Origin: Paramoeba atlantica
Lineage: Eukaryota > Protista > Discosea
DNA length: 64,000 bases
Assembly (NCBI GenBank): GCA_977017575.1
Contig: CDRNVI010000099.1
Coordinates: 186,001-250,000 of the forward strand
Direction of reading: 5' to 3'
Positions 7,053-56,241 of this stretch are shown one piece after another. Positions within the stretch are counted from its first letter, which is position 1; the number at the start of each line of letters is the position of its first letter. The notes below the pieces were generated by a model that worked only from the letters and a program-made list of their open reading frames with translations, made no database searches and was not told the origin of the DNA. The translations under genes and the position numbers were made by a program.

Positions 7053-7150
7053 GGGTCCAGGGGAGGGGTCCAGGGGGGGTCCAGTGGGTGGGCATACGTC
7101 GCGATTTTTTTTCACGGTTTTTTTTCCTTCTTCCAAAACCGATTACTGTA
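7053..7150 (+). repeat. ~100-bp direct repeat, copy 1 (copy 2 at 8121-8217)
   Basis: gggtccaggggaggggtccagggggggtccagtgggtgggcatacgtcgcgattttttt...ccaaaaccgattactgta occurs at both sites. Confidence 0.88.
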
Positions 7151-7290: not shown

Positions 7291-7841
7291 ATACAGTTTC
7301 TGTACCTTGTTGGTACTTTTTCCTTTAGATAATCTTTTCCTTCCCCGGCAACGGGCATAGTTTTACTATTTATATGCCCGTTGCCGGCCGGCACTAAGGC
7401 CGAAACTGTCCCTCTTTCTCGGCGAAGTAGGGGACGCGCTTCCACCCCATCACCCCTCCCCGGCTCACTCCTTGAGTGAGTTTTCTTCCCTCCCCGGCTT
7501 TCTTCCCTTCGCGTCTATTCCTTCCCGGGGAGCCGTGCGCCATGGTGGCCTCCCTTGAGGACCACTGGGCGTGGCTCTGCCTCGTCTTATCGCGAGGCAG
7601 CGGTCGGTTGCAGTGCGCCCCTCCGGCTGCGTAAAGAGGTGGTCAGTTGCCAGGACCACCTCCACCGACTGGGACCGAGTCGGCTGCGGAAAGAGAGGGC
7701 GAGTTGCCTGGATCCCCTCTACCGACAGAGTCTGTGCTAAATCCCCTTGATGCGACATCCGTCATTACGGATTGTGCCGATGATATCGGGTGTCGCATCA
7801 CGGGCTGTATCTCTGCGCCAACGAGCGCATGAACATCAAAA
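7291..7841 (+). ncRNA. spliced-leader-headed structured non-coding element, copy A
   Basis: atacagtttctgtaccttgttg|gta matches the kinetoplastid SL core and splice donor with the same spacing. It is followed by many hairpins and ends gaacatcaaaa; near-identical to 33125-33706. Confidence 0.7.
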
Positions 7842-8120: not shown

Positions 8121-8217
8121 GGGTCCAGGGGAGGGGTCCAGGGGGGGTCCAGTGGGTGGGCATACGTCGCGATTTTTTTTCCCGATTTTTTTGCTTTTTC
8201 CAAAACCGATTACTGTA
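8121..8217 (+). repeat. ~100-bp direct repeat, copy 2
   Basis: Matches 7053-7150. Confidence 0.88.
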
Positions 8218-11420: not shown

Positions 11421-11700
11421 TCACGTTACGTGACGAATCCTACTCGTCGAAAACCTCAATTTTTGTATTTTCAATATTAACCTTTCCAGCGTAGCTGGAA
11501 TAATAGCTGTACTAATTTCGCCATTCAGTTCCTCATTATCAGCTAAACTCAATTCTTCCAATCTATTAGGGAGACTGTCGAAAAACACTGTTCCATAAAA
11601 CTTGTTATAGCTCAAGTAAAGTTTTTGTAAAGTGGAGGGCAAACGAGACAACTCAATATAACCGGTGAGTTTGTTATCATAATTGATGATATCCTATCTT
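11421..11700 (-). pseudogene. 3' fragment of an LRR-family gene next to the retrotransposon 3' end
   Basis: DNKLTGYIELSRLPSTLQKLYLSYNKFYGTV..DSLPNRLEELSLADNEELNG; N-terminal part absent. Confidence 0.75.
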
Positions 11701-11762
11701 TTGAGATAAAGTATTTTTAGGATGTAACTAACTTGCGCATATGACGCTGTTAGGTGCATCCC

Positions 11763-12413
11763 TTATGCAGACAGTGTCTCTGCATCGCTCCATTGCGGGG
11801 AATCACGCTTGTGCCATAATAAGAAGCTGGAACGGATAGCAGTTCGGGAGAGTGTCGCCCGACATTTAGCCTCCAAATCTTCGTCCCCTCCAAACAACCG
11901 ATTAATATCCGCTGAGGAGGCTACCAGACCACCTCGTGCTCCAATTTCGAATACGAGGAGGTACGTGTTCGGGTGCACTGTTCGTTGTTCGTGTAATAGA
12001 GCGTTGTACTTGAGGCGTTTATATTCATTTGCCTGCATACAGTTCTCTTCCCAGGGGACAGTGAGCTCAACGATGTATTCTGTACCATCAGTCAGTGCAA
12101 CGAATCCGTCTGTGCGTTGATGATTTGGATTGTTGTGCAGCCAGTGTGATGGATTTCGGTGACCTAGTAGGTCAAAATGCTGATATTTTGTATGCGGGGA
12201 TTCTTGGATGCGTTTGGCGAGTTCAGTTAGAACTGTGTCGTGTCTGAGGGTATAACGCCCCTGATCAAGAGATGTTTTGCAACCTGAAATAACGTGTCGT
12301 ACCGTCTGTGCTTCTTTTCCGCATACTACATGTCGCATTTGAGAAGTGAAGGCCCCATGTCCGAACGTTTGACTTTGAGGGTAAAGGAGTGGTAAGTAGA
12401 ACCGAGGTCGCAA
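11763..12413 (-). pseudogene. CCHC zinc knuckle plus RLE endonuclease segment of the retrotransposon
   Basis: RHVISGC, RHDTVL, PD-like TDG, ELTVPWE, KRLKY, FEIGARG. Confidence 0.85.
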
Positions 12414-13135
12414 AACGTGTTAGCTTCGTGCTGTTCAGGTTGTTCAGTACGGCGGAAAACTCCTTCGCAAGTTCAGTTTCGGAAGGTGTTGTCCACCATT
12501 GCGCTGCGACCGGTGCTCATTTCTGAAGGTTTTGTACAATATTCGCTTCGTAATATTCCCGCACGATTTGTTTGGCGCGTTTTGCGTCGTTTAGATGTTG
12601 GAGGATTTCGCATGCTGGTCGTAGTTGCCCTCTAGCTCGCCTGTTTTGCTCCTCTTCAATGCGGGAGCGTAGCGCTGCTTGGACATTGATGTCTCTGGAT
12701 TTATTCATTTGAGTCATCGCGGTGGCAGTGCATTCGAACCAAAGCTTAGAGAGTGATGTTAGGCCCCAACCGCGATCTGAGTACAGGACTTCTGTGCTAC
12801 CTTTAGAGACCATGTTGATCCATTTCCTAATGTAGGAGGTTGCCGTCTTCCGGAGTCGAAGTATAAAGTTGAACGTTATGCATGGATGGACCGTGAAAGC
12901 ATATCGTAGGCGAGCGAGCATGGCATTTTGATAGATCCATAGTTTTTCAGGTAGCGTATGTGTGCTTCGGTGCACATTTTGTAACCAAGTCTTAAGTTTC
13001 GCGTTCAACTTTTTATACAGCTCTCTGGCTTGTTGTGCTCCAGGGGCCAGTGTCATTCCCAGGAAGGTACTACCTCTGTCGCAAATGTGGGGAATCGGAT
13101 CTCCGTCACATTCAATCTTTGCCCGCCTCGTCACA

Positions 13136-13916
13136 CAGTCCAGGTATTGGTTTCCCCCCCCCAGGATCCTGAGCACACCTTAAGAGCTTTTGACCTAATT
13201 CCTTCGGCATTCAACGGATCTCGAAAAAGTAGAGCGTTTCCCGCCGTTTGTTTGCCCATCACCCCCCCTGGGTTCTGGGTGGGTGTGATCAAAGATGGCA
13301 AATTTCAAAAATAAAAATATTTTTGAAGGGGGGTAAAAAATGACAAAAAAGGTGTAAGAATTCCTATATTAATACCCACAATGGTCTCTTTGAACGCTCT
13401 GCACTATTCGCAAGCGTTTAGGTACTGAATTTATGCAATTTAAGACTTGGCGTCGATAAGGATGACGCTTAAGCATCATGAAGGCTTTCTTTATTGCCTT
13501 CCGGAGCTGTGTTTCAGTCTCTGGCTTCAGAATTTCTTTTCTATATTGGTGGACAATTTCAAGGCGCTCTGGGAGTGCACATCGCGACATTTTATGGGTA
13601 ATAGGGGGTCTTGTTTTTCGGCGAGTTGGAGTACTGACCTTTAGTAGATTTAACGGGGGTATCCCTCAAATTCATAGAATAAGAAACCATATTTGATAAA
13701 AAACTCCCAATTTTTTGAAATATTGGATTTTTTTTGTTAAAATTATGCTATTTTTTCGTGTGTTTTCAAAATATTTTTGACCCAGTGGGGGTGATGGGCA
13801 AAAAAACGACGGGAAACGCTCTACTTTTTCGAGATCTGTTGAATGCCGAAGGAATTAGGTCAAAAGCTCTTACGGTGTGCTCAGGAGCCTGGGGGGGGAA
13901 ACCAGTACCTGGACTA
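13136..13916 (-). mobile_element. internally deleted Tc1/mariner element inserted in the RT gene
   Basis: ~140-bp TIRs (cagtccaggtattggtttcccc.. / ..ggggaaaccagtacctggacta); TA target (left copy CA); Tc1-type C-terminus CINSVPKRLRIV...HCGY; removal restores the RT frame (PGYMTRR). Confidence 0.87.
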
Positions 13917-14071
13917 TATATCCTGGATGTTCCGTTCCCGCTCGCATGGCCATACATTGTACCCTACTTTTTTCGACGTTGATAGACAATCCAATGCGTC
14001 TAAGGACGATAGAGAGTGATTGTATAGCATTGTTCATGTCGAAATCACTTGACGTAATTATCGTAAGGTCA

Positions 14072-15061
14072 TCAACATAAGCCTTTAGGAAGTGCTTTGG
14101 TGTATCGGGGTAGGATATGCCATAGTACGGGCATGTAGCGGAGGACGATCTCCATCGCAATATTGAAGAGCACTGGGGATAGAGTATCACCTTGTAGTAC
14201 GCCACGTTGCACTGCGATTTCCTTGGTTAGTCCTTGGTCGCATTTGAATCTCGTCGTGGCTGAGAGATACATGCCTTTGATGTATTCAATGATTTCGGGT
14301 GACACGCGCGCCCAGGTGAGAGCTTCGAATATGATGTCATGGGAAAGCGAACCGAATGCTTTTCTGAGGTCGATCTGGGCCAGACAGTACTGATTCTTCT
14401 TGCGCTGATGATGTTGCAGCAGGTTACACAGTGTTTGGGTGTGTTCCAGAGTTCCATTCATCCGTGGTAGAAACCCCTTTTGGATAGTCGTGTCAATAAC
14501 TCCTGAGCTTACAGCATGGTCCAGGAGTTGGTGTCCTATGATGCTGTGAAGAAGTTTTCCCAGACAGCTTGTGAGTGCTATGGGCCGCCAGTTCCTTGGT
14601 ATTTTAGGGTCTCCACCTTTGTGGATAAGACGCGTGATCGCTAGAGACCACGACGTGGGGCATGTCCCGAATTTTATTAAGTCATTAAACATTTTGGCCA
14701 GGGAGCTGTATAGTGCTGGGCATCGTTTTAGCGCTGCGTTTGTGATTGTATCTTGCCCTGGTGAGCTAGAGCCCCGTTTGCCTGAGATGGCATTGGCGAT
14801 TGTTTCGGCTTTTACTGGTATCCACGTCATTTCGTTGGTGGCTCTAGGGCCTAGTATATCGAAGTTTGGGAGCCGGAGAGTGTCGCGCTCTTTCGTTACT
14901 TGACTGTAATGTTCCTCTATTTCGAGCATTGTACAGCTTGGGTATTGCGTGTTTGTGACTTCATCCTCACTGGGTCTGTCCATGGCTTCAGCAGCCGCAG
15001 TCCATGGGTTTCTTGAGAAACGTTCATGCGCCCATCTACCTTCTAACGCTCGGCGTTGCAC
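14072..15061 (-). pseudogene. reverse transcriptase (N-terminal and central domains) of the RLE retrotransposon
   Basis: SSPGQDTIT, LIHKGGDP..NWRPIAL, QKGF, QIDLRKAFGS, QGDTLSPVLFNI. Confidence 0.9.
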
Positions 15062-16963
15062 GTCGGCCTCGTCTGCGTAGATTCTTTCTAGCTTCTTATT
15101 TTCTTTGATTTGGCGGCGTAAGGTATATCGGGCTTCCGTGCCATGGGTGAATCTAAGGGATCGTTTCAGTCGTTGTATATGCTTGGATAGTTCTCAGTTC
15201 ACTTTTTCTATGGCTAAAGGTCTATATTTAAATTTTGCATTTCCTTGCTTTGTGCGGAGAACGAACCCTTTGGTGGGATTCACCTCTTGACTCACCTCAA
15301 AGGTTGATACAACGATAGACGCGGCGAGTATAGCACCGTTCTCCTTTGCTAGGAGCGCGTTTGTGGTGTCTTCGTGTAGGAGCTCCTTGCATCTCCCTAG
15401 GGCTCGCTTTTCTACTGAACGCCATTGATCATCGTTTAGTTTGACGCAGAGTTTCCCACCTTGAATGTCGCTGTGTTGTTGAAGTAGTTCATGCCTTTTC
15501 TTGTGTAAGGGATCGTCGCGGTTCGGTGCTGGGCAATGATTCGTTGCTTCTCCGGAGATATTCGTGGTATTTCTTGCATGCGTGGAAGATTGCAGTTGAG
15601 AGAGAGGCCCGTATATCTTGCAGCATCGGTGAGCGCATGAGAGCTTTTCTCGGCATGTGTGCTTGCAGGGCCCTTTTCCTCCCGCACCTGGGTACCCAAA
15701 TGTAACACAAGTCGTACTGGGTTACGCTGCGTGATTCGTGCTTTGATCTGGCTGTAAACTCGCACTTTTGGGGGCTTCTTTGACGTCATTCTTCCTAGAT
15801 ATGTGCTTTGCTTCGTTAGTGCTGCAATAATGCCAGTCACGCTCGGGGTCCTGTGTGGGGTCGTATACTGACTGCATCGATCTCTCACTTTTCTGTACTG
15901 CCTCGTTGGCAGAGGCCCCTGCTTTTCTACCAACTTTTTTACGAAAGCTTCACAGAGCTCAGAGACTCTACTAGTTGCCCATCCTGCCAGCACTCCGACC
16001 TTTTCCAGAAAGGTTGTATCGTCATCATTCATGTCATGCACTGGATTCGGGGTGGGTAGGTCGTTCGCTGGGCCTTTGCACTGTGATGTTGCCGTTTTCT
16101 CTGCTCTTGACTGCGGGTTTCGCCGACTTCTAGTGGGCATGTCTGTGGCCTTTGGGGAGTGACCGAGTTCGCGAGTCGAGCTTCTCAAGTCCCATTTTAG
16201 CGTTCTGCCGGTGGTCGAGTTCGAATTCGTTGTGTCAAGGGTAGAGGTGCTTGCAGTTTCTTGATTATGGGTAGGTCCAAATATTTTGCAACACTTGTGC
16301 AGTGAAGATAGTTAGTGAAGATAATATTGCCGCCGATTTTGATTCTGCATGACATCCTGAGGAAGCAAATAAGATCTTATCGCTCCGTACACTATCACTA
16401 CAGTGTTGAACCGTATCATATCAATTAGTATACTTCTTGTTAGAGGGCACCAAAGGTAAGATGTCTGTTCACAAGAGGCATGAACGCGTCGCATGGCAGC
16501 AAGCTTATCATAGACTACTGCGTCTGAATCATTCTATTCAAGTAAAGTACTAGTTACTTCACTTTCACGACTCTACTTTTCCTATGTCGTCATAGAAACA
16601 ACCTTCCCCCGAAAGACAACCCCTCCCCTGAGGCATCTTCCCTTTCGGAAGCTCCGTTACGTTCTTCCAGGAAATTGCCGACACTACCGCCGAAAGTTCG
16701 CCTTAAGCGTCCTTCCTCTCCGCCTCCTTCATTGCAAAGTATGAGGGTTATTTCTGCAATCTCTAATGATACATTACATTGATACTCTAGTAAACGGGAC
16801 TGCGCTTTCTCAAAGTCAGTCCGTTGAAGATGCATCCACTGTGTCAATGTACGTCCCTGTAGCGCAGAGGCAAAGGCTTAAATCAGATCTGCATCAGGCA
16901 TATGAAGTGGCTCCTTCCCAGGCAGGGGAAATTTTACGCACACAAAAGGAGTGTAACCCTATG

Positions 16964-24700: not shown

Positions 24701-27700
24701 TCACATCTCCCCCACCCTCACCCTCGGCCATATACTCATCGCCATCAACTCCTGAAACAGCAACTTACACGCGTACGGCATCATCACCCCCACCACCCGA
24801 TTCACCACCCCACAGGCCCGACAGCTGTACACCACCCCCCTCCCTCCTCCCCCCCCCGTCCCCCCCTCCACCCGCACACTCTCCGGCGACACCATCCCAC
24901 ACCCCTCACACACCAGCACCCGGTAGTGGTCACTCACGTGGAACAGCCGCTCCTTCAGCCACCCACTCGCCCCGTGCGCAATCATGCAGTCCCGTTCCAT
25001 CTCCCCGAACCGCAGCCCCCCGAGCGCGGCCCGCCCCTCCGGGGGCTGCCGGGTTAAGGCCATTAACCGTCCCCGGGCTCTTGCATGGATTTTATCCATC
25101 GCAATATGTTTTAACCGTTGGTAGTAGGTGGGACCGAAGAAGATTAACGCTTCTAACGGGAGCCCGGTGTGTCCGTTATAGAGCTTCTCCTGACCCCACT
25201 TCTGGTACCCGCACTCCTGGAGCGCCCGGGCCACGTCCTGGACTACGGTGGGGACGAAGGCGGTGGCCTCGATTTCGTGACCCGTGGCTGCGCCCACTTT
25301 CCCGAATAAGGTCTCGATTAAGTGCGCCACGGTCATCCGGGACGGGATGGCATGGGGGTTCATAATAATATCGGGGGTGAGACCCGAGGCGGTGAAGGGC
25401 ATGTCCTCGGGCCGGGTGGTGATCCCGATCGTGCCCTTCTGGCCGTGGCGGGAGCAGAACTTGTCCCCGACATTGGGGACACGGGGGGCACGGGTTTTGA
25501 TTTTGTAGAGACGGTGGGGGCCAGCCAGCGGGGAGGTGGTCTCGGTGAGGAGAACGGCATCGATGGTGCCGTGTTCGGTGATCTTGGGGGCGGTGCTGTT
25601 GTCTTTTTTGGGGAAGGCGGCGGAGGGGTTTTCCAGTGGGTTCTCGGGGTTGGGTTCGGTTTTACCAAAGATGGCGTCGTTGCCGGTGACGACACTCCCG
25701 GGGATGGCGAGACCGTCGGTGTCAAGCAGGTTGTAGTTGAGATTGCGACGGAGACGGGCGGAGGTTTTGTCGGGTTTTTCGTAGGTCTCGTGGGAGCCGG
25801 GTTCGTCCTCGTAGACTTGGTAGCGTACGCTGCGGAAGAAGCCGCGGTCGATGGCGGCTTGGTTCATCACGACGGAGTCCTCCTGGTTGTACCCGCTGTA
25901 GCACATGATGGCGACAATGGCGTTGTGGCCCGCGGGGAGGTCGTTGCTGTGCATGTAGCTCATGGCCTGGGTGCGGCAGAGTGGTTTTTGGGGGTAGTAG
26001 AGGACGTGGGCGGTGGTGTCGAAGCGGAGATTGTAGTTGGAGGCGTAAATGCCCATGGCTTGTTTCCCCATGGCGCTTTGGTAGGTGTTTCGTGTGCCGG
26101 GGTTGTGGTCGGCAAAGGGAATAATGGAGGCGCAGATCCCGAGGATTAAACTGGGGTGAATCTCGCAGTGGGTGTAGGCGTTCTTCGCGAGCTCTGTGCG
26201 GGACATGGCGATCAGCGCGGTGTCCTCCTCCTCGACGTCTAGAAAGTCAATATAGGGGCCCTGGAGGAGAAGTGACCACAGGGAGTTTCCGGGGCTCCGC
26301 GCGGCAACTTGTTTGCACCGCTCCAAGGCGTATCGCGTTAGGCTCACCTCATGGTTGTGGACGACAAAAACGGGGCGCACGGGACGGCCCGCATCGGTGC
26401 AAATACGCAGCTCCTTGTCTCGGATGTCGTGGACAATACTGAGGTAGTCCCCGCTGGCGTTCAGGGAGCTGGCGGCAGCGTGGGCCAGAGTGGTTTGATG
26501 AGGAGATCTTCCGGCTTGAAACCCACGCCCCGGTTCCCACGCGCTCTCTTGGATTCCCGACAACACGCGCGGAGCTGAGGTCAGGGCTCGGCTCTCTCTT
26601 CGCACCCGTTTCATCTTCTCTACAAGAGGAAACACGTCGTGGTGGGTACCAATCCAGCGCCCGTTAACAAACACACGAAACCCCTCCTCGGAGTGGCTCA
26701 TATTGAGCTCCTCGAGGGGCTCTACCCCCGCTTGCTCGAGCCAACGAATCACGCCTTGGGGGTCTGCCGCCCCTACGCTACATAGACTCAACAACGCGAG
26801 GTTTTTCACCAGCCCACATTGCCCCCCTTCCGGGGTCTCGGCTGGACACAGCATCCCCCAGTGGGTACAATGCAACATACGGGGTTTGGTTTGCTTACTA
26901 CTCGTGTCAATTGGCGTGTTAAGTCGTCGAAGATGAGATAGCGCAGAGGAGTAGGTCAAACGATTGAGCACTTGCGCGACTCCGGTTTTGCTCCCCTCGA
27001 GTTGTCCTTTGACACCCCAGTTTCCTGTGGCTAAGGCGTACGCCAAGTTCGCGGTAACGGCATTCGCTACGCAGCGCTCAAAAGCATCCCGTAGATTCAG
27101 CTGAGCTCGCTTTTTCAGTTCCCGGTCCAGAAACGGTTTCAAACTTTTTTGCATCGCATGGGAGAGCACTGCACTTAGCAATTGCCCCAGCAATGCGCCC
27201 GCAGTGTCGATACGTTTGTTGCCGTAAAAATCACGATCATCTTGTTCCCGTCTTCCAAGCGCGACGAGCAACAGTTTATGAGCAATATACCCGAGGTAGT
27301 ACGACTTCCCGCGCTCACATCCAGGCTCTACCCCCATGTGCGGTAGAAACGTGGATTGGAGGAATTGCCGCCCTACCGCTTCCTGTTCCGCAGCCGGTCT
27401 CGTGGCTAAATCCGGGCGATACCGAAGCGCAATAAAGCGAACCGCCTGGGACGCACTCGGCAAATCTTTCGCCTCCTCGACGCTGGGCTGCAGTTTCTCC
27501 AACATTTCAAAATCTTCCAGGTTGTACGCGCAAAGTGTCATCCCCTCCTTATCACTTCCACACCCGAGGGCACGCATCAGCACAAAAAGAGGAATATCTT
27601 CGGCCAGCGCTTTATGAAAAACCCGCAATGTGCCAATTTCCGCCATGAGCTTTAATTTCACCGTACTCGGGGCACGATACGACCCTTCCATTGCACTTCG

Positions 27701-28519
27701 TATCTCCGCAATATGCGAAACCGTGTCCAATTTCCCCCGTGCGAAAACCATCACATGGTTACTGGCCTGTCGTTCCTGGGCGACCATGACCTTCTCGGTC
27801 CCCTTCACGACAAAATACCCCCCCTGGTCATGGAGGCACTCCCGGGCCCATGGCATTTCACGCTCCGCTACTTTGGCTAAATTACACCACTGTGATTTCA
27901 ACATCACCGGGACGCGACCGATATCGATTTTCGCATGCAAATGATCCGACAGTAACACAAACTCACTGTCGGGGGATTGTTGTGAAAAGCGTCGGACCCG
28001 GACATCGGCCATGATGGCCCCTGCGTAGGTCAGCCGACGCAGCCGACAATCCTGCGGGTACAGCAGCCGGGCCTCCTCCCCGCCCAACGGTAACGCGGTC
28101 TCATCTTGCGGCACGGCTCGGGTTAAATCTTTTAACTCGATGGAAACAAATTCGCGACAAAAACTGGAGGGGTCTTCGCCGGGGTGATTCGCGTTGGTGA
28201 GTTCGATTTCAATCGGTCGGGTCTCGCGCAAAATCCGGGGGAGCCCGACGAGCATGAAATGGTTGAAGCTGTCGAGCTGGGAGGACACGAGGCCTTTCTC
28301 GGTGAAGAACGCGGTGACGACCTCCCAGAGCTGTTCCGGGGAGAGGTGGGAGGGGGTGGGGGGGAGGGTGGAAGGGGGAGCGGGGGAGAAGGGGGAGAAG
28401 GGGTCCTCCGGATGGGGGGTTGCGGCTTGGGAGGAGGAGGAGGTGGAGGAGAGCTCGGCGTCGTCGAGACTGAGCTCGTCGATGGCTTCAAGGGTGTCGA
28501 TTTCGTCAGGAGCGGACAT
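24701..28519 (-). CDS. RPB2: DNA-directed RNA polymerase II second-largest subunit
   Basis: DQGGYFVVKGTEKV, CPAETPEG, RNTYQSAMGKQAMG, GYNQEDS, GDKFCSRHGQKG, GGLRFGEMERDCMIAHG, PYACKLLFQELMAM. Confidence 0.97.
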   Translation of the reverse strand: MSAPDEIDTLEAIDELSLDDAELSSTSSSSQAATPHPEDPFSPFSPAPPSTLPPTPSHLSPEQLWEVVTAFFTEKGLVSSQLDSFNHFMLVGLPRILRETRPIEIELTNANHPGEDPSSFCREFVSIELKDLTRAVPQDETALPLGGEEARLLYPQDCRLRRLTYAGAIMADVRVRRFSQQSPDSEFVLLSDHLHAKIDIGRVPVMLKSQWCNLAKVAEREMPWARECLHDQGGYFVVKGTEKVMVAQERQASNHVMVFARGKLDTVSHIAEIRSAMEGSYRAPSTVKLKLMAEIGTLRVFHKALAEDIPLFVLMRALGCGSDKEGMTLCAYNLEDFEMLEKLQPSVEEAKDLPSASQAVRFIALRYRPDLATRPAAEQEAVGRQFLQSTFLPHMGVEPGCERGKSYYLGYIAHKLLLVALGRREQDDRDFYGNKRIDTAGALLGQLLSAVLSHAMQKSLKPFLDRELKKRAQLNLRDAFERCVANAVTANLAYALATGNWGVKGQLEGSKTGVAQVLNRLTYSSALSHLRRLNTPIDTSSKQTKPRMLHCTHWGMLCPAETPEGGQCGLVKNLALLSLCSVGAADPQGVIRWLEQAGVEPLEELNMSHSEEGFRVFVNGRWIGTHHDVFPLVEKMKRVRRESRALTSAPRVLSGIQESAWEPGRGFQAGRSPHQTTLAHAAASSLNASGDYLSIVHDIRDKELRICTDAGRPVRPVFVVHNHEVSLTRYALERCKQVAARSPGNSLWSLLLQGPYIDFLDVEEEDTALIAMSRTELAKNAYTHCEIHPSLILGICASIIPFADHNPGTRNTYQSAMGKQAMGIYASNYNLRFDTTAHVLYYPQKPLCRTQAMSYMHSNDLPAGHNAIVAIMCYSGYNQEDSVVMNQAAIDRGFFRSVRYQVYEDEPGSHETYEKPDKTSARLRRNLNYNLLDTDGLAIPGSVVTGNDAIFGKTEPNPENPLENPSAAFPKKDNSTAPKITEHGTIDAVLLTETTSPLAGPHRLYKIKTRAPRVPNVGDKFCSRHGQKGTIGITTRPEDMPFTASGLTPDIIMNPHAIPSRMTVAHLIETLFGKVGAATGHEIEATAFVPTVVQDVARALQECGYQKWGQEKLYNGHTGLPLEALIFFGPTYYQRLKHIAMDKIHARARGRLMALTRQPPEGRAALGGLRFGEMERDCMIAHGASGWLKERLFHVSDHYRVLVCEGCGMVSPESVRVEGGTGGGGGRGVVYSCRACGVVNRVVGVMMPYACKLLFQELMAMSIWPRVRVGEM

Positions 28520-32551: not shown

Positions 32552-33124
32552 TTGTCGCTAAACTTGTAAATTTCAATCCCAAGAAAAAAGTGATGCGGGC
32601 AAGAATCAAAAGGCATACAACTCGAAAACTGGAGGGAAAGAACAAAATTTGTAAAATTGAATCGCAAGAACATGTGATGCGGGCAAGAACCAAAGAGCAT
32701 ACAACTCGAAAACTTGAACTAAAGAGCAAAATTAGAAACTTTGAATCCCCCCCCAAAAAAATAAAGAGTATTATTACGACCATACTCTGCAGACGGAGCA
32801 AAATGTTTTATCATAGAGATCTACATGTAGGTCAATCTATTTAGCAAAACGAAGTTAGTACTGAGAAAAAGACGTAGTAGGTAATTTAGGTGATGAGAAA
32901 AAAAGCAAAAAAAATAGTTTCCGAAAATTATTGAGACCAATTTATCGTATTCTCCTCCGAAACAGCATTCCAGCGTTCAGGCTTGCATATTTCGCCAGCC
33001 GGTCTACCTGGAGTGCTGGTGGGCATGCGACAAAGTAAATCCTGGTTATGACCTAAATAAAGTTGCTCTATACAGCGGGGCATGTGGGTCAAGTCAACAA
33101 TCCCAGAAAATTTGTTGATTCCAA

Positions 33125-33706
33125 TTTTTTTTGATGTTCATGCGCTCGTTGGCGCAGAGATACAGCCCTTGATGCGACAGCCGATATCATCGGCACAATC
33201 CGTATTGACGGATGTCGCACCAAGGGGGTTTAGCTCGGACTCTGTCGGTAGAGGGGGTCCAGGCAACTCGCCCTCTCTTTACGCAGCCGGAGGGGCGCAC
33301 TGCAACCGACTCGGTCCCAGTCGGTAGAGGTGGTCCAGGCAACTCACCACCTCTTTACGCAGCCGGAGGGGCGCACTGCAACCGACCGCTGCCTCGCGAT
33401 AAGACGAGGCAGAGCCACGCCCAGTGGTCCTCAAGGGAGGCCACCATGGCGCATGGCTCCCCGGGAAGAAAAGGGCGCGAAGGGAAGAAAGCCGGGGAGG
33501 GAAGAAAACCCACTCAAGGAGTGAGCCGGGGAGGGGTGATGGGGTGGAAGCGCGTCCCCTACTTCTCCGAGAAAGAGGGACAGTTTCGGCCTTAGTGCCG
33601 GCCGGCAACGGGCATATAAAACAGTAAGATTATGCCCGTTGCCGGGGAAAGAAAAGATGAACTAAAGGGAAAATGTACCAACAAGGTACAGAAACTGTAT
33701 CTTTAT
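33125..33706 (-). ncRNA. spliced-leader-headed structured non-coding element, copy B
   Basis: Reverse complement begins ataaagatacagtttctgtaccttgttg|gtac and ends gaacatcaaaaaaaa; colinear with 7291-7841, with two complete 67-nt modules. Confidence 0.72.
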
Positions 33707-34446
33707 GCTTGCAGGATCTGCAAGCTCGCTGGCAGAGCAGTTAAGTCGGGACATCCAGATAAATCGTTGCATCGAAGATCAAGCTTCTCCAGATGTGGCG
33801 GAAGATTTGTGAGGCAAATTTCACCCCTGAACGCGTTTTGGCCTAATATCAGTGCTTTCATGCTTTGAGGAAGGGAACTCAAATCTAATTCACCCTGAAA
33901 ATTGTTTATGGTCAGGTCAAACACTTCTAAATTCAGTGGGAGTTCACGTAATGAAACAAGACCTCTCATGGCGTGCCTTTCTCCGCTGAATCTGAGCAAT
34001 GTCTGCGGAAGATGTTGAAAATATATGATACCGCGTAAAATCTGGTTTTCATCACCATCCCAACATATTTCTACTATCTGACTGTTGTCGTTGCACTTTA
34101 CACCAAACCATTCGCACGCTGGGGTGCTGGTACTCCAAGACTCGGGCAATCCAGATTCAACGTAACTCTGCTTCAACAGTACAGGGTGGTACGTGGTCTG
34201 TGGGACCCAGACGAAGTCTCTGCGAATCATCTCCAAATCTCGCACCAGTTGGGCCAATTTGTATTCTTCCGGTAGGGTAGCCTGGCTCACCTTTCCCGAA
34301 CGTACCAAAGAGTGTCTGTGTGTCTGACTCGACGCGGATGGGTTTGGATTCGCCGCACTCCTAGACTCACATCTGTTTCCCGGAACGTCGGAGGGGTCGT
34401 GCGAGAGTGACAAAAAAATTATCGAAGGGAATCGACGGATATCCAT
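33703..34446 (-). CDS. leucine-rich repeat protein, apparently 3'-truncated
   Basis: GKV..TLPEE leader, ACEWFGVKC cap and LRRs; the stop codon falls in the first bases of the SL-headed element. Confidence 0.85.
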   Translation of the reverse strand: MDIRRFPSIIFLSLSHDPSDVPGNRCESRSAANPNPSASSQTHRHSLVRSGKVSQATLPEEYKLAQLVRDLEMIRRDFVWVPQTTYHPVLLKQSYVESGLPESWSTSTPACEWFGVKCNDNSQIVEICWDGDENQILRGIIYFQHLPQTLLRFSGERHAMRGLVSLRELPLNLEVFDLTINNFQGELDLSSLPQSMKALILGQNAFRGEICLTNLPPHLEKLDLRCNDLSGCPDLTALPASLQILQA

Positions 34447-54726: not shown

Positions 54727-54800
54727 ATAAAGATACAGTTTCTGTACCTTGCTGGTACATTTTCGCTAGTTCATCTTTTCTTTTCCCGGAAACGGGCATA
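54727..54800 (+). ncRNA. truncated spliced-leader-headed element, copy C
   Basis: ataaagatacagtttctgtaccttgctg|gtacattttcgctagttcatcttttcttttcccggaaacgggcata; homology stops in the first hairpin arm. Confidence 0.7.
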
Positions 54801-55097
54801 CTCTTTTTGTGAGTATCGGTCAACGTCTCGTCATGGCACACTCCCATAGCTGCTGTAATAGTTTTTATGATAATAATTATTAATAAAAATAATAATTATG
54901 CGATATAAAATTATTAAGAATTATTATAGCTTCTTCTCAGGGTGAAAGTGGCGCCGCGAAGCGGCGCTGAATTTTTTATAACGCACGTGATGGTGAGTAT
55001 CTTTATCGTTTACTACCCATGCAACAAGTAGTAGATCTATAATAATTATTAATAATTCTTAATAATAGCCTAGTATTACAGACTTCAAATATTAATA

Positions 55098-56241
55098 CTG
55101 TCCCCCCTATTTACTATTGAGTGCTCAACCCCCCCTATTTAGTGTTGAATTTTGGGTTCGGTGCGTATAGGCGCCGCGAAGCGGCGCTTAATTTTTTTTT
55201 CTTATCTCTGCTTGTTATTTGTGATTGGTTACTCTCCATCTCATTGATTTTAATAAATATAATTTATAACAAAAATGAAAATTTATATTCATATTTATGT
55301 TTATAAAAATCAATTAGAAAGCTTCCCAAGGATACTGATTTTTGCATCGACTTTACATCGGTTAAGAAGTTTCAGTTCAGTTCCGGTAAGTAAACATAGA
55401 GTAAGTAATGAAAATGTGTCGAGAGAAGCGCTCTTCCTAACAACAAATTTATCTAAAAAATTAACTACTGGTGGTAAATAAATTTACGAAGGCTTTTACA
55501 AAACAAAGGGGTGATCAGCACTTTCAGGGGAAATTATGTCCTCTTCATTTTCATCAAGAACCGGTATTACTGTAAACAGTTCGCTCGCACGGCGAATCGA
55601 AATTCGCTTCAAGGATACTTTCTGGCTTATTTAGACTTTCCGGTGAAATTCCGACCTTACCCCACGCTTGAACATTGGCATGCCTCTGCCGATTATCGTT
55701 GAGGTGGGCGTACGTTTTGATAATACTGTCAATAAGCTGTGCTTTGCTTATTTTTACTCCGATGGACCGAGTGTCACCGATTCGCTTTCCCTCATTGTAT
55801 TGAGTCTGGCAGTATTTCAGTAAGGCCAAGGTTCGATAGTATATATAATAGTTTTAGCTTCAAACGGTTAAATAAACCCACATCGCAAGGCTGAAGTCTT
55901 CATGTGCACTTTGCTGGAATGTACACAATTCGCAACCATGAAAAGGTGTCTTCGTTGCGCGTGATAAGTGCAGAGCGTGTGGTATGTACAGAGCAGCAAT
56001 CCAAGATAAGCAATCCAAAATAAAATACGTCTCCCCACAGGACTTTTATACAAATGCCCCACAGCGTTCATAAAGACGTATCCCCAACCGAGTGAAAAAA
56101 TACTACAATCATGGTTTTAAAAACAATAGGCCGCGAAGCCTATTCTCTCCTCCCCTTTTTTGAGGGGAGGAGATTGCTTACCCCCCCTATTTAGTGTTGA
56201 ATTTTTCCGAATTTCACTCAACACTAAATAGAGGGCGACAG
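55098..56241 (-). mobile_element. internally deleted pogo/Tigger-family DNA transposon
   Basis: TIR ctgtcccccctatttactattgagtg / cactcaacactaaatagagggcgacag; TA both sides; manual translation YIPAKCT*RLQPCDVGLFNRLK (DDE_1 motif). Confidence 0.82.

What the first reader, a model, noticed from the sequence alone, without database searches (positions are those of the whole stretch)
7291..7841. Dispersed spliced-leader-headed structured RNA element (candidate SL-derived SINE or novel SL-RNA class)
Seen: three loci (7291 +, 33706 -, 54727 +) carry (G)ATACAGTTTCTGTAC-N5-TG|GTA. Known: GATACAGTTTCTGTAC is the core of the Trypanosoma cruzi spliced leader, and the 7-nt spacing to the GT donor is the same. 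Unlike normal SL genes, the copies are dispersed, lack a shared 5' half of the mini-exon and continue for ~550-580 nt of stems. These include a 15-bp ccggcaacgggcata hairpin, gagcc..ggctc, tgcctcg/cgaggca, tandem junction modules and a cccttg.tgcgaca/tgtcgcatca.ggg multibranch, followed by an A-tract. Copies A and B are colinear; several differences in the 3' multibranch fall in a loop or preserve pairing as G-U. Inference: a mobile non-coding element that captured SL sequence, or an unusual long SL-like RNA able to donate a leader.
Basis: partly seen in the sequence, partly recalled or inferred. Interest (0 to 1): 0.85.

Follow-up and report, generated by a model that had tools for sequence, protein, structure and literature searches.

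The report
Spliced-leader-headed SINE retroposon family
The three loci are copies of a young, non-coding jumping element that carries a DNA copy of part of the cell's own spliced leader at its front; it is not a spliced-leader RNA gene, and it often lands inside leucine-rich-repeat genes.

Summary
The motif is at 7291(+), 33700(-) and 54733(+), and copies A and B are colinear and about 570 nt long.

The genome's real spliced-leader (SL) genes lie in tandem arrays with 5S rRNA. Their exon is followed by GTATGAGAAGC..., which is unrelated to the element's GTACATTTT.... The "GT donor" is therefore the first letters of the element body, joined exactly at the exon's end.

The element is a SINE-like retroposon:
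- 180 heads in the genome, 151 joined to the SL end and 0 preceded by AG.
- Young copies differ from their majority sequence at 1-8 of 570 columns.
- 5'-truncated copies exist.
- Sequencing contigs hold an empty site for copy B, which shows a 5-bp target deletion and no duplication.
- Its 3' stem-loop module is shared, with covariation, with R2-like LINEs.
- 9 of 30 copies sit at one fixed point of LRR coding repeats.

Most SL relics start at SL nt 10-13. How the leader is renewed each round is unresolved, and no RNA data were usable.

Earlier reports of this scan describe the same family on other DNA of this genome.

The parts
7291..7312 (+). Copy A: spliced-leader relic, SL nt 17-38 of the 38-nt exon
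   Evidence: The exon was defined from the array genes.
7313..7841 (+). Copy A: element body. An older, diverged copy that differs from the majority of the young copies at 47 of 570 alignment columns, including a 19-nt gap. It lies in pyrimidine-rich non-coding DNA.
7743..7838 (+). Copy A: 3' module, made of a three-way junction plus ATCTCT, a hairpin, ATGA and a short tail
33707..33712 (-). Copy B: 6 filler letters between the LRR target and the relic. They are absent from the empty allele.
33679..33706 (-). Copy B: spliced-leader relic, SL nt 11-38
33133..33678 (-). Copy B: element body. It differs at 1 of 570 columns from the majority of the young copies.
33598..33647 (-). Copy B: 5' hairpin of 14-16 bp. 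Two of its pairs show compensatory changes in a sister subfamily.
33244..33386 (-). Copy B: two tandem 76-nt stem-loop modules
33132..33227 (-). Copy B: 3' module. A three-way junction (13-bp closing helix and two 6-bp hairpins), then ATCTCT, a GCGC/GCGC hairpin, ATGA and the tail.
33125..33132 (-). Copy B: tail of 8 A. The 3' junction with the LRR gene lies at 33124/33125.
33713..34000 (-). LRR gene, part upstream of copy B. In the empty allele, 33713 is joined to 33124 through 5 other letters and the LRR reading frame runs on.
32900..33124 (-). LRR gene, part downstream of copy B. The Asn codon of its NxFSG motif starts 8 nt after the insert.
54727..54754 (+). Copy C: spliced-leader relic, SL nt 11-38, with one T-to-C change
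54755..54808 (+). Copy C: first 55 nt or so of the body, of a sister-type head. The rest of the element is missing.
11660..16188 (-). Context: a decayed R2-like LINE (RVT_1 and a C-terminal ELTVPWEE-type motif). Its 3' end abuts LRR coding sequence. It belongs to the class of elements proposed to move the SINE.

Best explanation
The loci are copies of a non-autonomous, ORF-less retroposon of about 570 bp, a SINE in the wide sense.

Shown: its DNA begins with the 3' part of the host's spliced-leader exon, joined exactly at the exon's last base to a structured body, and ends in a short A-rich tail.

Inferred from here on:
- The leader piece entered the lineage on RNA. An element transcript that carried the SL exon, most simply by ordinary trans-splicing, was reverse-transcribed from its 3' end.
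- The reverse transcriptase came from R2-like LINEs with a restriction-like endonuclease. These LINEs recognise a 3' module (ATCTCT, hairpin, ATGA) that the SINE shares with them.
- Integration is by target-primed reverse transcription at a staggered cut. It leaves a small target deletion and filler letters, not a target-site duplication.
- The preferred target is one fixed point of leucine-rich-repeat coding units, 8-9 nt before the Asn codon, so insertions break LRR genes.
- The cDNA usually fails to reach the leader's 5' end, so most copies keep only SL nt 10-13 to 38.
- The GT after the leader is the start of the body, not a splice donor.

How source copies regain a full leader in each round is open.
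For: 1. Genuine SL genes.
- 36 exact full-length exon+GTA matches, mostly in arrays with a period of about 2.56 kb that also hold 5S rRNA.
- Their intron, GTATGAGAAGC..., is unrelated to the body.
- An SL-gene contig diverges from copy B at 33676.

2. The same exon end is followed by about 20 different sequences in 25 other contexts. Many of these open long ORFs.

3. Family size and age.
- 38 near-full places among the 40 candidates scored, out of 432 candidates.
- 180 heads, of which 151 are preceded by TTGTTG.
- 82 tails.
- Unique flanks.
- Median pairwise identity of 98.6% among 29 aligned copies.

4. Retroposition marks.
- The relic start varies from SL nt 6 to 17 among near-identical copies.
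- 5'-truncated copies keep the 3' end: 3 of the 5 headless tails examined, 2 of them independent.

5. Empty site of copy B.
- Contigs of runs X1 and X2 join 33124 to 33713 through 5 other letters.
- Read, this restores an open LRR frame.
- The filled allele has lost 5 bp, gained 6 filler letters and has no duplication.

6. Shared 3' module.
- 8 rows: 5 SINE-type and 3 LINE tails.
- Hairpin paired in 32 of 32 cells, 4 of 4 pairs changed on both sides, 0 of 500 shuffles as high.
- The LINE RT's best solved relatives are R2 proteins (8gh6, E = 1e-25), ahead of L1 ORF2 (4.5e-20).
- A CCHC motif and an RPDG...ELTCPWEE...K motif lie at the C-terminus.

7. LRR target.
- 9 of 30 copies (28 independent loci) have an N-x-[FLIM]-x-G motif downstream: at 8-9 nt in 8 copies and at 15 nt in 1.
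- A sister copy and the window's LINE remnant also abut LRR coding sequence.
Against: - No RNA evidence. The one run guessed to be RNA laid 0 contigs, so neither expression nor a full leader on the SINE RNA is shown.
- No source locus with an AG acceptor in front of the body: 0 of 180 heads, and one chance hit of a shorter pattern. Fresh trans-splicing in every round is therefore not supported by this assembly.
- No LINE with the SINE's exact tail was found. The similarity to LINE tails is at motif and structure level only.
- The restriction-like endonuclease is read from motifs alone.
- Only one empty site was seen. The kind of runs X1 and X2 is not on record.
- The sharp difference in relic start is unexplained: nt 9 or later in 28 of 30 SINE copies, against nt 1-5 in 21 of 25 other SL-headed contexts.
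- The hairpin was read off the same 8 sequences on which it was then counted.
Confidence: 0.8

Rival explanations
1. The element derives from an SL RNA gene or is a long SL-like RNA, and TTG|GTAC is a working 5' splice site that can donate a (partial) leader.
For: - The relic is followed by GT.
- The first three letters after the exon (GTA) are the same as in the true SL gene.
- The RNA is strongly structured.
- SL RNA itself is sometimes retroposed: L063 holds exon plus intron plus an A tail.
Against: - Beyond GTA there is no similarity to the SL intron.
- 28 of 30 copies lack SL nt 1-8 or more.
- There is no SL promoter flank, and the upstream flanks are all different.
- The copies are dispersed, not in arrays.
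- No Rfam family matches.
- Other element families begin with other letters after the same exon end.
Confidence: 0.03
2. The leader was not put on the SINE RNA by trans-splicing. It was added during reverse transcription, when the R2-like RT jumped from the 5' end of a leaderless element RNA to another RNA that ends with the SL exon.
For: Stuttered or partly doubled leader pieces occur at some 5' junctions (L037, L038, L040, L054, L020, L025). Head-to-tail trains also occur (L017, L023, L002). Both look like template jumps. That R2 RT jumps templates is recalled knowledge, not tested here.
Against: - The junction is exact and identical in 151 of 180 heads across at least 7 head variants. It is therefore inherited, not made anew by an imprecise jump.
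- A free SL exon is a rare intermediate.
Confidence: 0.07
3. A SLACS/CZAR/CRE-like situation. The SL sequence is target DNA, and the elements are site-specific insertions into SL sequences at nt 11/12.
For: - 16 of 30 relics start at SL nt 11 or 12. That is the insertion point of CZAR and SLACS in the mini-exon (passage read in PMC5814959).
- In L023, and in L002 after a (TG)n run, an R2-like LINE tail lies directly upstream of a relic.
Against: - The upstream flank is never SL nt 1-11. It is LRR coding sequence, microsatellite or other unique DNA.
- The empty allele of copy B has no SL sequence at all.
- Only 2 of 30 copies have a true LINE tail just upstream.
Confidence: 0.02
4. The leader relic is a heritable working part of the element. 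Rare copies with a full relic are transcribed from the relic's own first bases, so no trans-splicing is needed after the founding event.
For: - 0 of 180 heads have an AG acceptor, while the junction is kept through at least 7 diverged head variants.
- A few copies carry a (near) full relic: L069/L070, L013, L015.
- Other SL-headed elements keep relics from nt 1-5.
Against: - There is no evidence for promoter activity of the exon.
- No RNA data are available.
- A source locus may simply be missing from the assembly or may differ in its first letters.
Confidence: 0.2

Closest known systems
SINE/LINE pairs in which the SINE borrows the LINE's 3' stem-loop (recalled general knowledge)
   Same: Short, ORF-less, high-copy and dispersed, with 5'-truncated copies. 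Its 3' module (ATCTCT, hairpin, ATGA) is shared with LINE tails, with covariation.
   Different: The head is not a Pol III gene (tRNA, 7SL, 5S or snRNA) but a relic of the SL exon. The partner class is R2-like, not APE-type. No LINE with an identical tail was found.
R2 and other LINEs with a restriction-like endonuclease
   Same: The RT is closest to solved R2 proteins. A CCHC motif and a PD..E..K-like motif follow the RT. The 3' UTR is structured. The target position is fixed, with a small target deletion and no duplication.
   Different: The target is a protein-coding LRR repeat, not rDNA. The elements carry the host's SL at the 5' end. No HDV-like ribozyme was detected.
SLACS / CZAR / CRE, retroposons that sit in SL genes
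   Same: They are euglenozoan retroposons tied to the spliced leader. The commonest relic start (nt 11-12) matches their insertion point (PMC5814959, passage).
   Different: Those elements interrupt SL genes and are flanked by both halves of the exon. Here the SL piece is part of the element, and the flanks and the empty site hold no SL sequence.
Dinoflagellate retrogenes with relict spliced leaders (PMC5585692 and PMC12014239; abstracts seen in the listing)
   Same: They are DNA copies of SL-bearing RNAs, recognisable by an SL remnant at the 5' end.
   Different: Here the copied RNAs are transposable elements (LINEs and a SINE) with their own 3' recognition module and a target preference, in an organism with a kinetoplastid/diplonemid-type leader.
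RIME/ingi and NARTc/L1Tc of trypanosomatids
   Same: A non-autonomous partner of a LINE in a trans-splicing organism.
   Different: Those share the Pr77 head, and their transcripts lack an SL (PMC5814959, passage; abstracts). Pr77 was not searched for here.
The genuine SL RNA gene of this genome
   Same: It shares SL exon nt 11-38 and the three letters GTA after it.
   Different: It has the full exon, the GTATGAGAAGC intron, a unit of about 100 nt, and sits in tandem arrays with 5S rRNA. The intron shows no similarity to the element body.

Membership tests
Spliced-leader RNA gene | Full-length SL exon at the 5' end behind the conserved SL gene upstream region | tested here: not met
   The relic starts at SL nt 9-17 in 28 of 30 copies, and the upstream flanks are all different. 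Array genes share 120 nt of upstream sequence.
Spliced-leader RNA gene | The exon is followed by the SL intron of this genome (GTATGAGAAGC... with its stem-loops) | tested here: not met
   The body shows no similarity to the intron: score 12, shuffle mean 14, 1880 of 2000 shuffles at least as high.
Spliced-leader RNA gene | Tandem array organisation, here together with 5S rRNA | tested here: not met
   The element copies are dispersed over many contigs. The arrays on C97, C107, C11 and C74 hold the true genes and 5S.
SINE (non-autonomous non-LTR retroposon) | Short, no ORF, many dispersed copies with unrelated flanks | tested here: met
   About 570 bp. 180 heads and 82 tails, unique flanks, and no protein-family signal sought or seen in the body. 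The longest ATG ORF read by eye is 30 codons.
SINE (non-autonomous non-LTR retroposon) | 3' end shared with a partner LINE | tested here: inconclusive
   The motif-and-hairpin module is shared with 3 R2-like LINE tails, with covariation. No LINE with the same tail sequence was found.
SINE (non-autonomous non-LTR retroposon) | Marks of target-primed reverse transcription: 5' truncations and a polymorphic insertion with a clean empty site | tested here: met
   5'-truncated copies, variable relic starts, and the empty site of copy B.
SINE (non-autonomous non-LTR retroposon) | Head derived from a Pol III-transcribed small RNA with an internal promoter (strict definition) | tested here: not met
   No tRNA, 5S, 7SL or snRNA family matches the element. 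The head is an SL exon relic.
R2-like (restriction-like endonuclease) LINE as the mover | RT of the R2 type | tested here: met
   For the L021 RT piece, R2 proteins are the best solved relatives (E = 1e-25 to 6e-22), ahead of L1 ORF2 (4.5e-20). RVT_1 by Pfam.
R2-like (restriction-like endonuclease) LINE as the mover | C-terminal CCHC motif and PD-(D/E)xK endonuclease after the RT | tested here: inconclusive
   The motifs are seen by eye and conserved in 3 aligned copies. A weak zf-RVT hit falls below Pfam's cut-off. The end piece has no PDB or Pfam match.
R2-like (restriction-like endonuclease) LINE as the mover | The LINE protein actually copies the SINE RNA | not testable with these tools
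   This needs binding or retrotransposition assays.
SLACS/CZAR/CRE-type insertion in SL sequence | The element is flanked by SL nt 1-11 upstream and nt 12 onwards downstream | tested here: not met
   The upstream flanks are not SL. The empty allele of copy B is plain LRR sequence.
Retrocopy of a trans-spliced RNA (as in dinoflagellate retrogenes) | The SL remnant is joined to the copied sequence exactly at the exon's 3' end | tested here: met
   151 of 180 heads are preceded by TTGTTG. The same junction point is used by about 20 unrelated continuations.
Retrocopy of a trans-spliced RNA (as in dinoflagellate retrogenes) | A source locus with a splice acceptor, or RNA that shows the leader on the transcript | tested here: not met
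   0 of 180 heads are preceded by AG, and no RNA run was usable. The absence may reflect the assembly.

The most novel reading that the evidence does not exclude
The leader relic may be a working 5' module of these retroelements rather than a scar.
- Only the rare copies with a full relic would be sources, transcribed or capped by virtue of the SL exon sequence itself. The lineage would then no longer need a splice acceptor, which fits 0 of 180 heads having one.
- In the SINE, SL nt 15-22 pair with an 8-nt complement just before the 3' hairpin. This panhandle would set the usual 5' end at nt 10-13.
- The movers would be descendants of SL-gene-targeting CRE/SLACS-like LINEs that were retargeted to LRR coding repeats. 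That would make them a driver of LRR gene turnover.
Probability: 0.15. Interest if true: 0.85.

Novelty: new variant of a known kind. Interest (0 to 1): 0.6.

Why it matters
In trans-splicing organisms it is unclear how retrotransposons obtain a capped, translatable and well-defined 5' end. The known trypanosomatid LINEs use an internal promoter and make transcripts without a leader (PMC5814959), or they sit in SL genes.

Here whole families, LINEs and at least one SINE superfamily, carry the host leader in their DNA. This points to a third solution. It also gives a built-in tag for dating and tracing retroposition, as the relict leader does for dinoflagellate retrogenes.

The fixed landing point in LRR coding repeats means that these elements break, and perhaps reshuffle, a large gene family. 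One such event (copy B) is caught with its empty allele.

My five paper searches and the passages read in two papers turned up no description of this.

Tried and rejected
- Rfam. The whole window at gathering score gave 0 matches. Copy B at E up to 10 gave only three weak chance-level matches and no ribozyme or SL family. Rfam also did not name the true SL gene; it named only the 5S rRNA beside it.
- SL intron against the element body: no similarity.
- Source locus with an AG acceptor. A 13-letter pattern gave 1 hit, which is unrelated sequence. A longer gapped pattern gave 0 hits.
- LINE with the SINE's own tail.
  - 82 tails were found.
  - By comparing the places listed, I judged about 11 tails to lack a listed head. 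I fetched 5 of them: 2 were full copies with mutated heads, and 3 (2 independent) were 5'-truncated SINEs.
  - A tandem unit of about 5.2 kb on C65 ends in the last 117 nt of the SINE but holds no LINE ORF.
- LINE tail directly upstream of relics: 3 of 30 motif hits, of which 2 are true LINE tails and 1 is a chance match in LRR sequence.
- RNA evidence. No holder is on record as RNA, and the one guessed RNA run laid nothing.
- Endonuclease fold.
- Organism. The window's RPB2 is 45% identical to the Bodo and Trypanosoma proteins and 56-66% to unnamed proteins. I can only say it is a euglenozoan with a kinetoplastid/diplonemid-type leader.
- Papers.
  - Listings only for (0 papers).
  - Passages read in PMC10161547: R2- and SLACS-like RTs are mentioned, but no leader-headed elements in the passages shown.
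  - Passages read in PMC5814959.
The repeat tables of PMC10161547 might bear on whether diplonemid repeats carry leader relics.

Rows left out of counts:
- The window's LINE tail was left out of alignment A1 because it lacks the exact ATCTCT form.
- L003/L006 and L007/L012 share flanks, so the 30 loci are 28 independent ones.
- The LRR motif was sought only downstream and only in the element's orientation.
Full report
OBSERVATION

The 15-mer ATACAGTTTCTGTAC stands at 7291-7305 (+), 33686-33700 (-) and 54733-54747 (+). No other place in the window matches with up to 2 mismatches. Shuffles give 0.12 on average, and 0 of 100 reach 3.

All three copies read on as ...CCTTG(T/C)TG GTAC.

Copy A (7291-7841) and copy B (33125-33706, minus strand) are colinear over about 570 nt. 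Copy C shares only the leader piece and about 55 nt after it.

The RNA of copy B folds at -256.5 kcal/mol against -198.9 for shuffles, z = -8.06. Tandem Repeats Finder reports the two 76-nt modules at 33244-33386.

THE REAL SPLICED LEADER

The window's assembly (45.7 Mb, 248 contigs) holds the 13-mer core 811 times, against 2 for a reversed control.

A pattern of the leader plus GTA has 36 exact matches. Most lie in arrays on contigs C97 and C107 (period about 2.56 kb), C11, C74, C3 and C24.

In these arrays a conserved 120-nt upstream region is followed by a 38-nt exon ending ...CCTTGTTG, and then by GTATGAGAAGCTTCG.... The same repeat unit holds a 5S rRNA gene (99 bits). These are the ordinary SL genes.

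But the sequence after the exon in the element (GTACATTTTCC...) is not the SL intron. A local alignment of 110 nt of each scores 12, against a shuffle mean of 14, and 1880 of 2000 shuffles do as well or better. In the read-laying, an SL-gene contig matches copy B only up to 33676 and then runs on as the true intron (table 7).

WHAT FOLLOWS THE LEADER ELSEWHERE

In 25 distinct further contexts sampled from contigs C1 and C2, the same exon end is followed by about 20 different sequences. Many of them reach an ATG within 25-50 nt and open ORFs of hundreds of codons.

The genome has at least 1851 candidate reverse-transcriptase places, of which 150 were scored and all lie over Pfam's cut-off.

The leader is thus found at the 5' tip of many unrelated mobile elements, always cut at the exon's last base. 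That is what DNA copies of leader-bearing RNAs should look like.

THE FAMILY

A search with copy A scored 40 of 432 candidates. Of these, 38 places cover nearly the whole query at 88-100% identity.

Counts by pattern:
- 116 exact copies of the last seven leader letters plus GTACATTTT.
- 180 heads of the form GTAC[A/T]TTTT...CCGG[A/C]AAC, in at least seven variants.
- 151 of those 180 are preceded by TTGTTG, and none by AG.
- 82 tails with up to 2 mismatches.

Thirty copies with flanks were aligned. L003/L006 and L007/L012 share flanks, so 28 loci are independent.
- Homology begins inside the leader and ends at ...GCGCATGAACATCAAAA. All flanks differ.
- The 29 copies other than A have a median pairwise identity of 98.6%. 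Most differ from their majority sequence at 1-8 of 570 columns, and copy B at 1.
- A middle group differs at 18-21 columns, and copy A at 47.

A sister subfamily of about 610 bp shares the first 290 nt at 80-84% and the last 90 nt at 76%. An old, shorter relative lies antisense in the SL/5S array unit, behind a long (CT)n run.

MARKS OF RETROPOSITION

The leader relic starts at SL nt 17, 16, 15 or 14 in one copy each, at 13 in three, 12 in six, 11 in ten, 10 in four, 9 in one and 6 in two. This spread occurs among copies that are otherwise nearly identical, so the 5' ends were made anew at each insertion.

I fetched five tails for which I saw no head in the listed part. Two were full copies with mutated heads. 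Three (two independent) keep only the last 200-209 nt.

Laying contigs of four runs on 32600-34300 gave the decisive piece. In runs X1 and X2 (one study, kind not on record, flat depth of 20-26 on the flanks), a contig joins 33124 to 33713, skips 588 letters and has 5 other letters in between (tables 5, 5c and 8).

Read on the minus strand together, this empty form continues the LRR frame without a break as ...A S L Q I L N L G I N K F S G. I read this by hand; no tool was given the joined form.

Compared with the empty form, the filled allele has lost those 5 letters. It has gained 6 filler letters, the leader from nt 11, the body and 8 A. There is no target-site duplication.

Whether the two forms are alleles of one cell line or differ between isolates cannot be told. 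The runs may come from the sample that was assembled.

WHO MOVES IT

Four LINE 3' ends were at hand: three in fetched loci and one in the window.
- Their ORFs end in a conserved RPDG...E-L-T-C/V-P-W-E-E...K block (44-50% identity among three), preceded in L023 by a CCHC motif.
- The RT piece of a related copy has R2 proteins as its best solved relatives (8gh6, E = 9.9e-26; 8ibw; 9nl3; 9dou), ahead of L1 ORF2 (4.5e-20).
'Restriction-like endonuclease LINE' therefore rests on the RT match, the motifs and the integration scar.

Three of these LINE tails and all SINE-type tails share ATCTCT, then a 4-6 bp hairpin of different sequence, then ATGA and a short tail.

On an 8-row alignment the four hairpin pairs are standard pairs in 32 of 32 cells. 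All 4 pairs show changes on both sides, and 0 of 500 shuffles reach the covariation score. Sliding the partner by one column drops pairing to 4-9%. One caveat applies: I read the structure off these same rows.

RNAalifold, which chooses its own structure, finds the terminal hairpin as well. Compensatory changes occur in 5 of 32 pairs, all between the main and the sister subfamily. It finds the 5' hairpin too, with 2 of 16 pairs compensatory.

No LINE with the SINE's exact tail turned up.

TARGET

In 9 of the 30 copies, the downstream flank read in the element's orientation encodes N-x-[FLIM]-x-G. The motif starts 8-9 nt after the insert in 8 copies and at 15 nt in 1. Upstream, the same frame reads L-x-x-L.

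A full-relic copy of the sister subfamily, the LINE-plus-SINE train in L023 and the window's own LINE remnant also abut LRR coding sequence.

I did not look for antisense insertions, so I make no claim about orientation bias.

WHAT STAYS OPEN

1. Renewal of the leader. No head has an acceptor in front of it (0 of 180), yet the junction has been kept through at least seven diverged head variants. There are three possibilities: the source loci are missing from the assembly; they differ in the letters I required; or copies with a full relic serve as sources without fresh trans-splicing. Full relics are rare. The exact full-leader pattern (36 matches) falls mostly on array genes. It hits the SINE sister subfamily at two places with identical flanks, and three places went unexamined.

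2. Relic starts. SINE relics start at nt 9 or later in 28 of 30 copies. Other leader-headed elements start at nt 1-5 in 21 of 25 contexts, and the five 'nt 1' cases are ambiguous because A runs lie upstream. The commonest SINE start, nt 11-12, is the insertion point of CZAR and SLACS in the mini-exon (PMC5814959, passage). I cannot say whether that is chance.

3. A possible panhandle. The predicted fold pairs SL nt 15-22 with an exact 8-nt complement just before the 3' hairpin. The pairing is shorter in the sister subfamily (6) and in the LINE tails (4). Trimming of the RNA to this panhandle is a hypothesis, not a result.

4. No RNA data. The only run guessed to be RNA laid no contig.

COMPARISON AND NOVELTY

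The element works like a SINE that borrows a LINE's 3' recognition structure, and it integrates like an R2-type element. It fails the strict SINE definition, because it has no Pol III gene head. It also fails every defining feature of an SL gene that I could test.

The principle of a leader relic marking a retrocopy is known from dinoflagellate retrogenes (abstracts in the listing). Known trypanosomatid retroposons either lack the leader on their RNA or sit inside SL genes.

I found no description of leader-headed LINE/SINE families or of LRR-repeat targeting in five searches or in the passages of two papers. Supplements were closed.

Earlier reports of this scan describe the same family on other DNA of this genome and reach the same main reading. 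I wrote down my reading of the leader-body junction, before the first look-up. The leads to R2-like movers and to the fixed LRR position came partly from those notes, and I tested them here.

VERDICT

It is a new variant of known kinds. Interest 0.6.

Noticed in passing
window 7053-7137 and 8121-8205: Two 85-nt direct repeats, 92% alike, G-rich (GGGTCCAGGGG...) and ending in T runs, lie 1068 nt apart and bracket copy A with about 150 nt and 280 nt of pyrimidine-rich DNA. Whether copy A sits inside a larger repeat unit was not followed.
   Followed up: no
window 11660-16188 (minus strand): A decayed R2-like LINE whose ORF is broken into at least 4 pieces. It has RVT_1 in 14072-15061 and a conserved C-terminal block in 11763-12413. 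It has no leader relic, and its 3' end runs straight into LRR coding sequence.
   Followed up: partly
L063 (G000:C6, around 27087, minus strand): A retrocopy of the whole SL RNA. The exon from nt 3 plus the intron up to ...GGGGCTT is followed by six A and then a tandem repeat, with a non-SL upstream flank. Unspliced SL RNA is therefore also copied back now and then.
   Followed up: no
L064 1245-1560 (minus strand), also L065-L068 and L071: The SL/5S array unit carries an old, short relative of the SINE, antisense to the SL gene. It shares about 155 nt of the 5' part and 93 nt of the 3' module at 83-85% identity and sits directly behind a (CT)n run of more than 150 nt.
   Followed up: partly
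L037, L038, L040, L054, L055, L020, L025 (5' junctions): Stuttered or partly doubled leader pieces lie in front of the relic: for example, a second partial leader a few letters upstream, or the last 7-10 leader letters twice. They look like slips or template jumps of the RT.
   Followed up: no
window 33679-33706 with 33155-33162 (copy B); the same in copy A: SL nt 15-22 (AGATACAG) have an exact 8-nt complement (CTGTATCT) just before the terminal hairpin. Both the MFE and the centroid fold pair them. The complement is 6 nt in the sister subfamily and 4 nt in the LINE tails.
   Followed up: partly
L078 (G000:C65:6400-11700): A tandem unit of about 5.2 kb, with three tails spaced 5.2 kb apart. 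It starts with a short leader fragment and ends in the last 117 nt of the SINE. It has no long sense ORF and carries an antisense RNase H-like ORF.
   Followed up: partly
L021 1-1500 and 2072-3332: One SINE copy is inserted inside the ORF of an R2-like LINE, just after the RT domain. A second LINE end in the opposite orientation and an ORF with a helix-turn-helix-like start lie downstream.
   Followed up: no
window 24701-28519 (minus strand): The window's RPB2 is only 45% identical to the Bodo and Trypanosoma proteins, and equally far from plant and algal ones. Its best relatives (56-66%) are unnamed proteins from ENA and JGI. The organism looks like a deep euglenozoan lineage rather than a trypanosomatid.
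   Followed up: partly
window 54809-55200: Directly after the copy C fragment comes very AT-rich DNA with two copies of a GC-rich palindrome-like piece (GGCGCCGCGAAGCGGCGCT), each followed by a T run. This is possibly another small element that cut copy C short.
   Followed up: no
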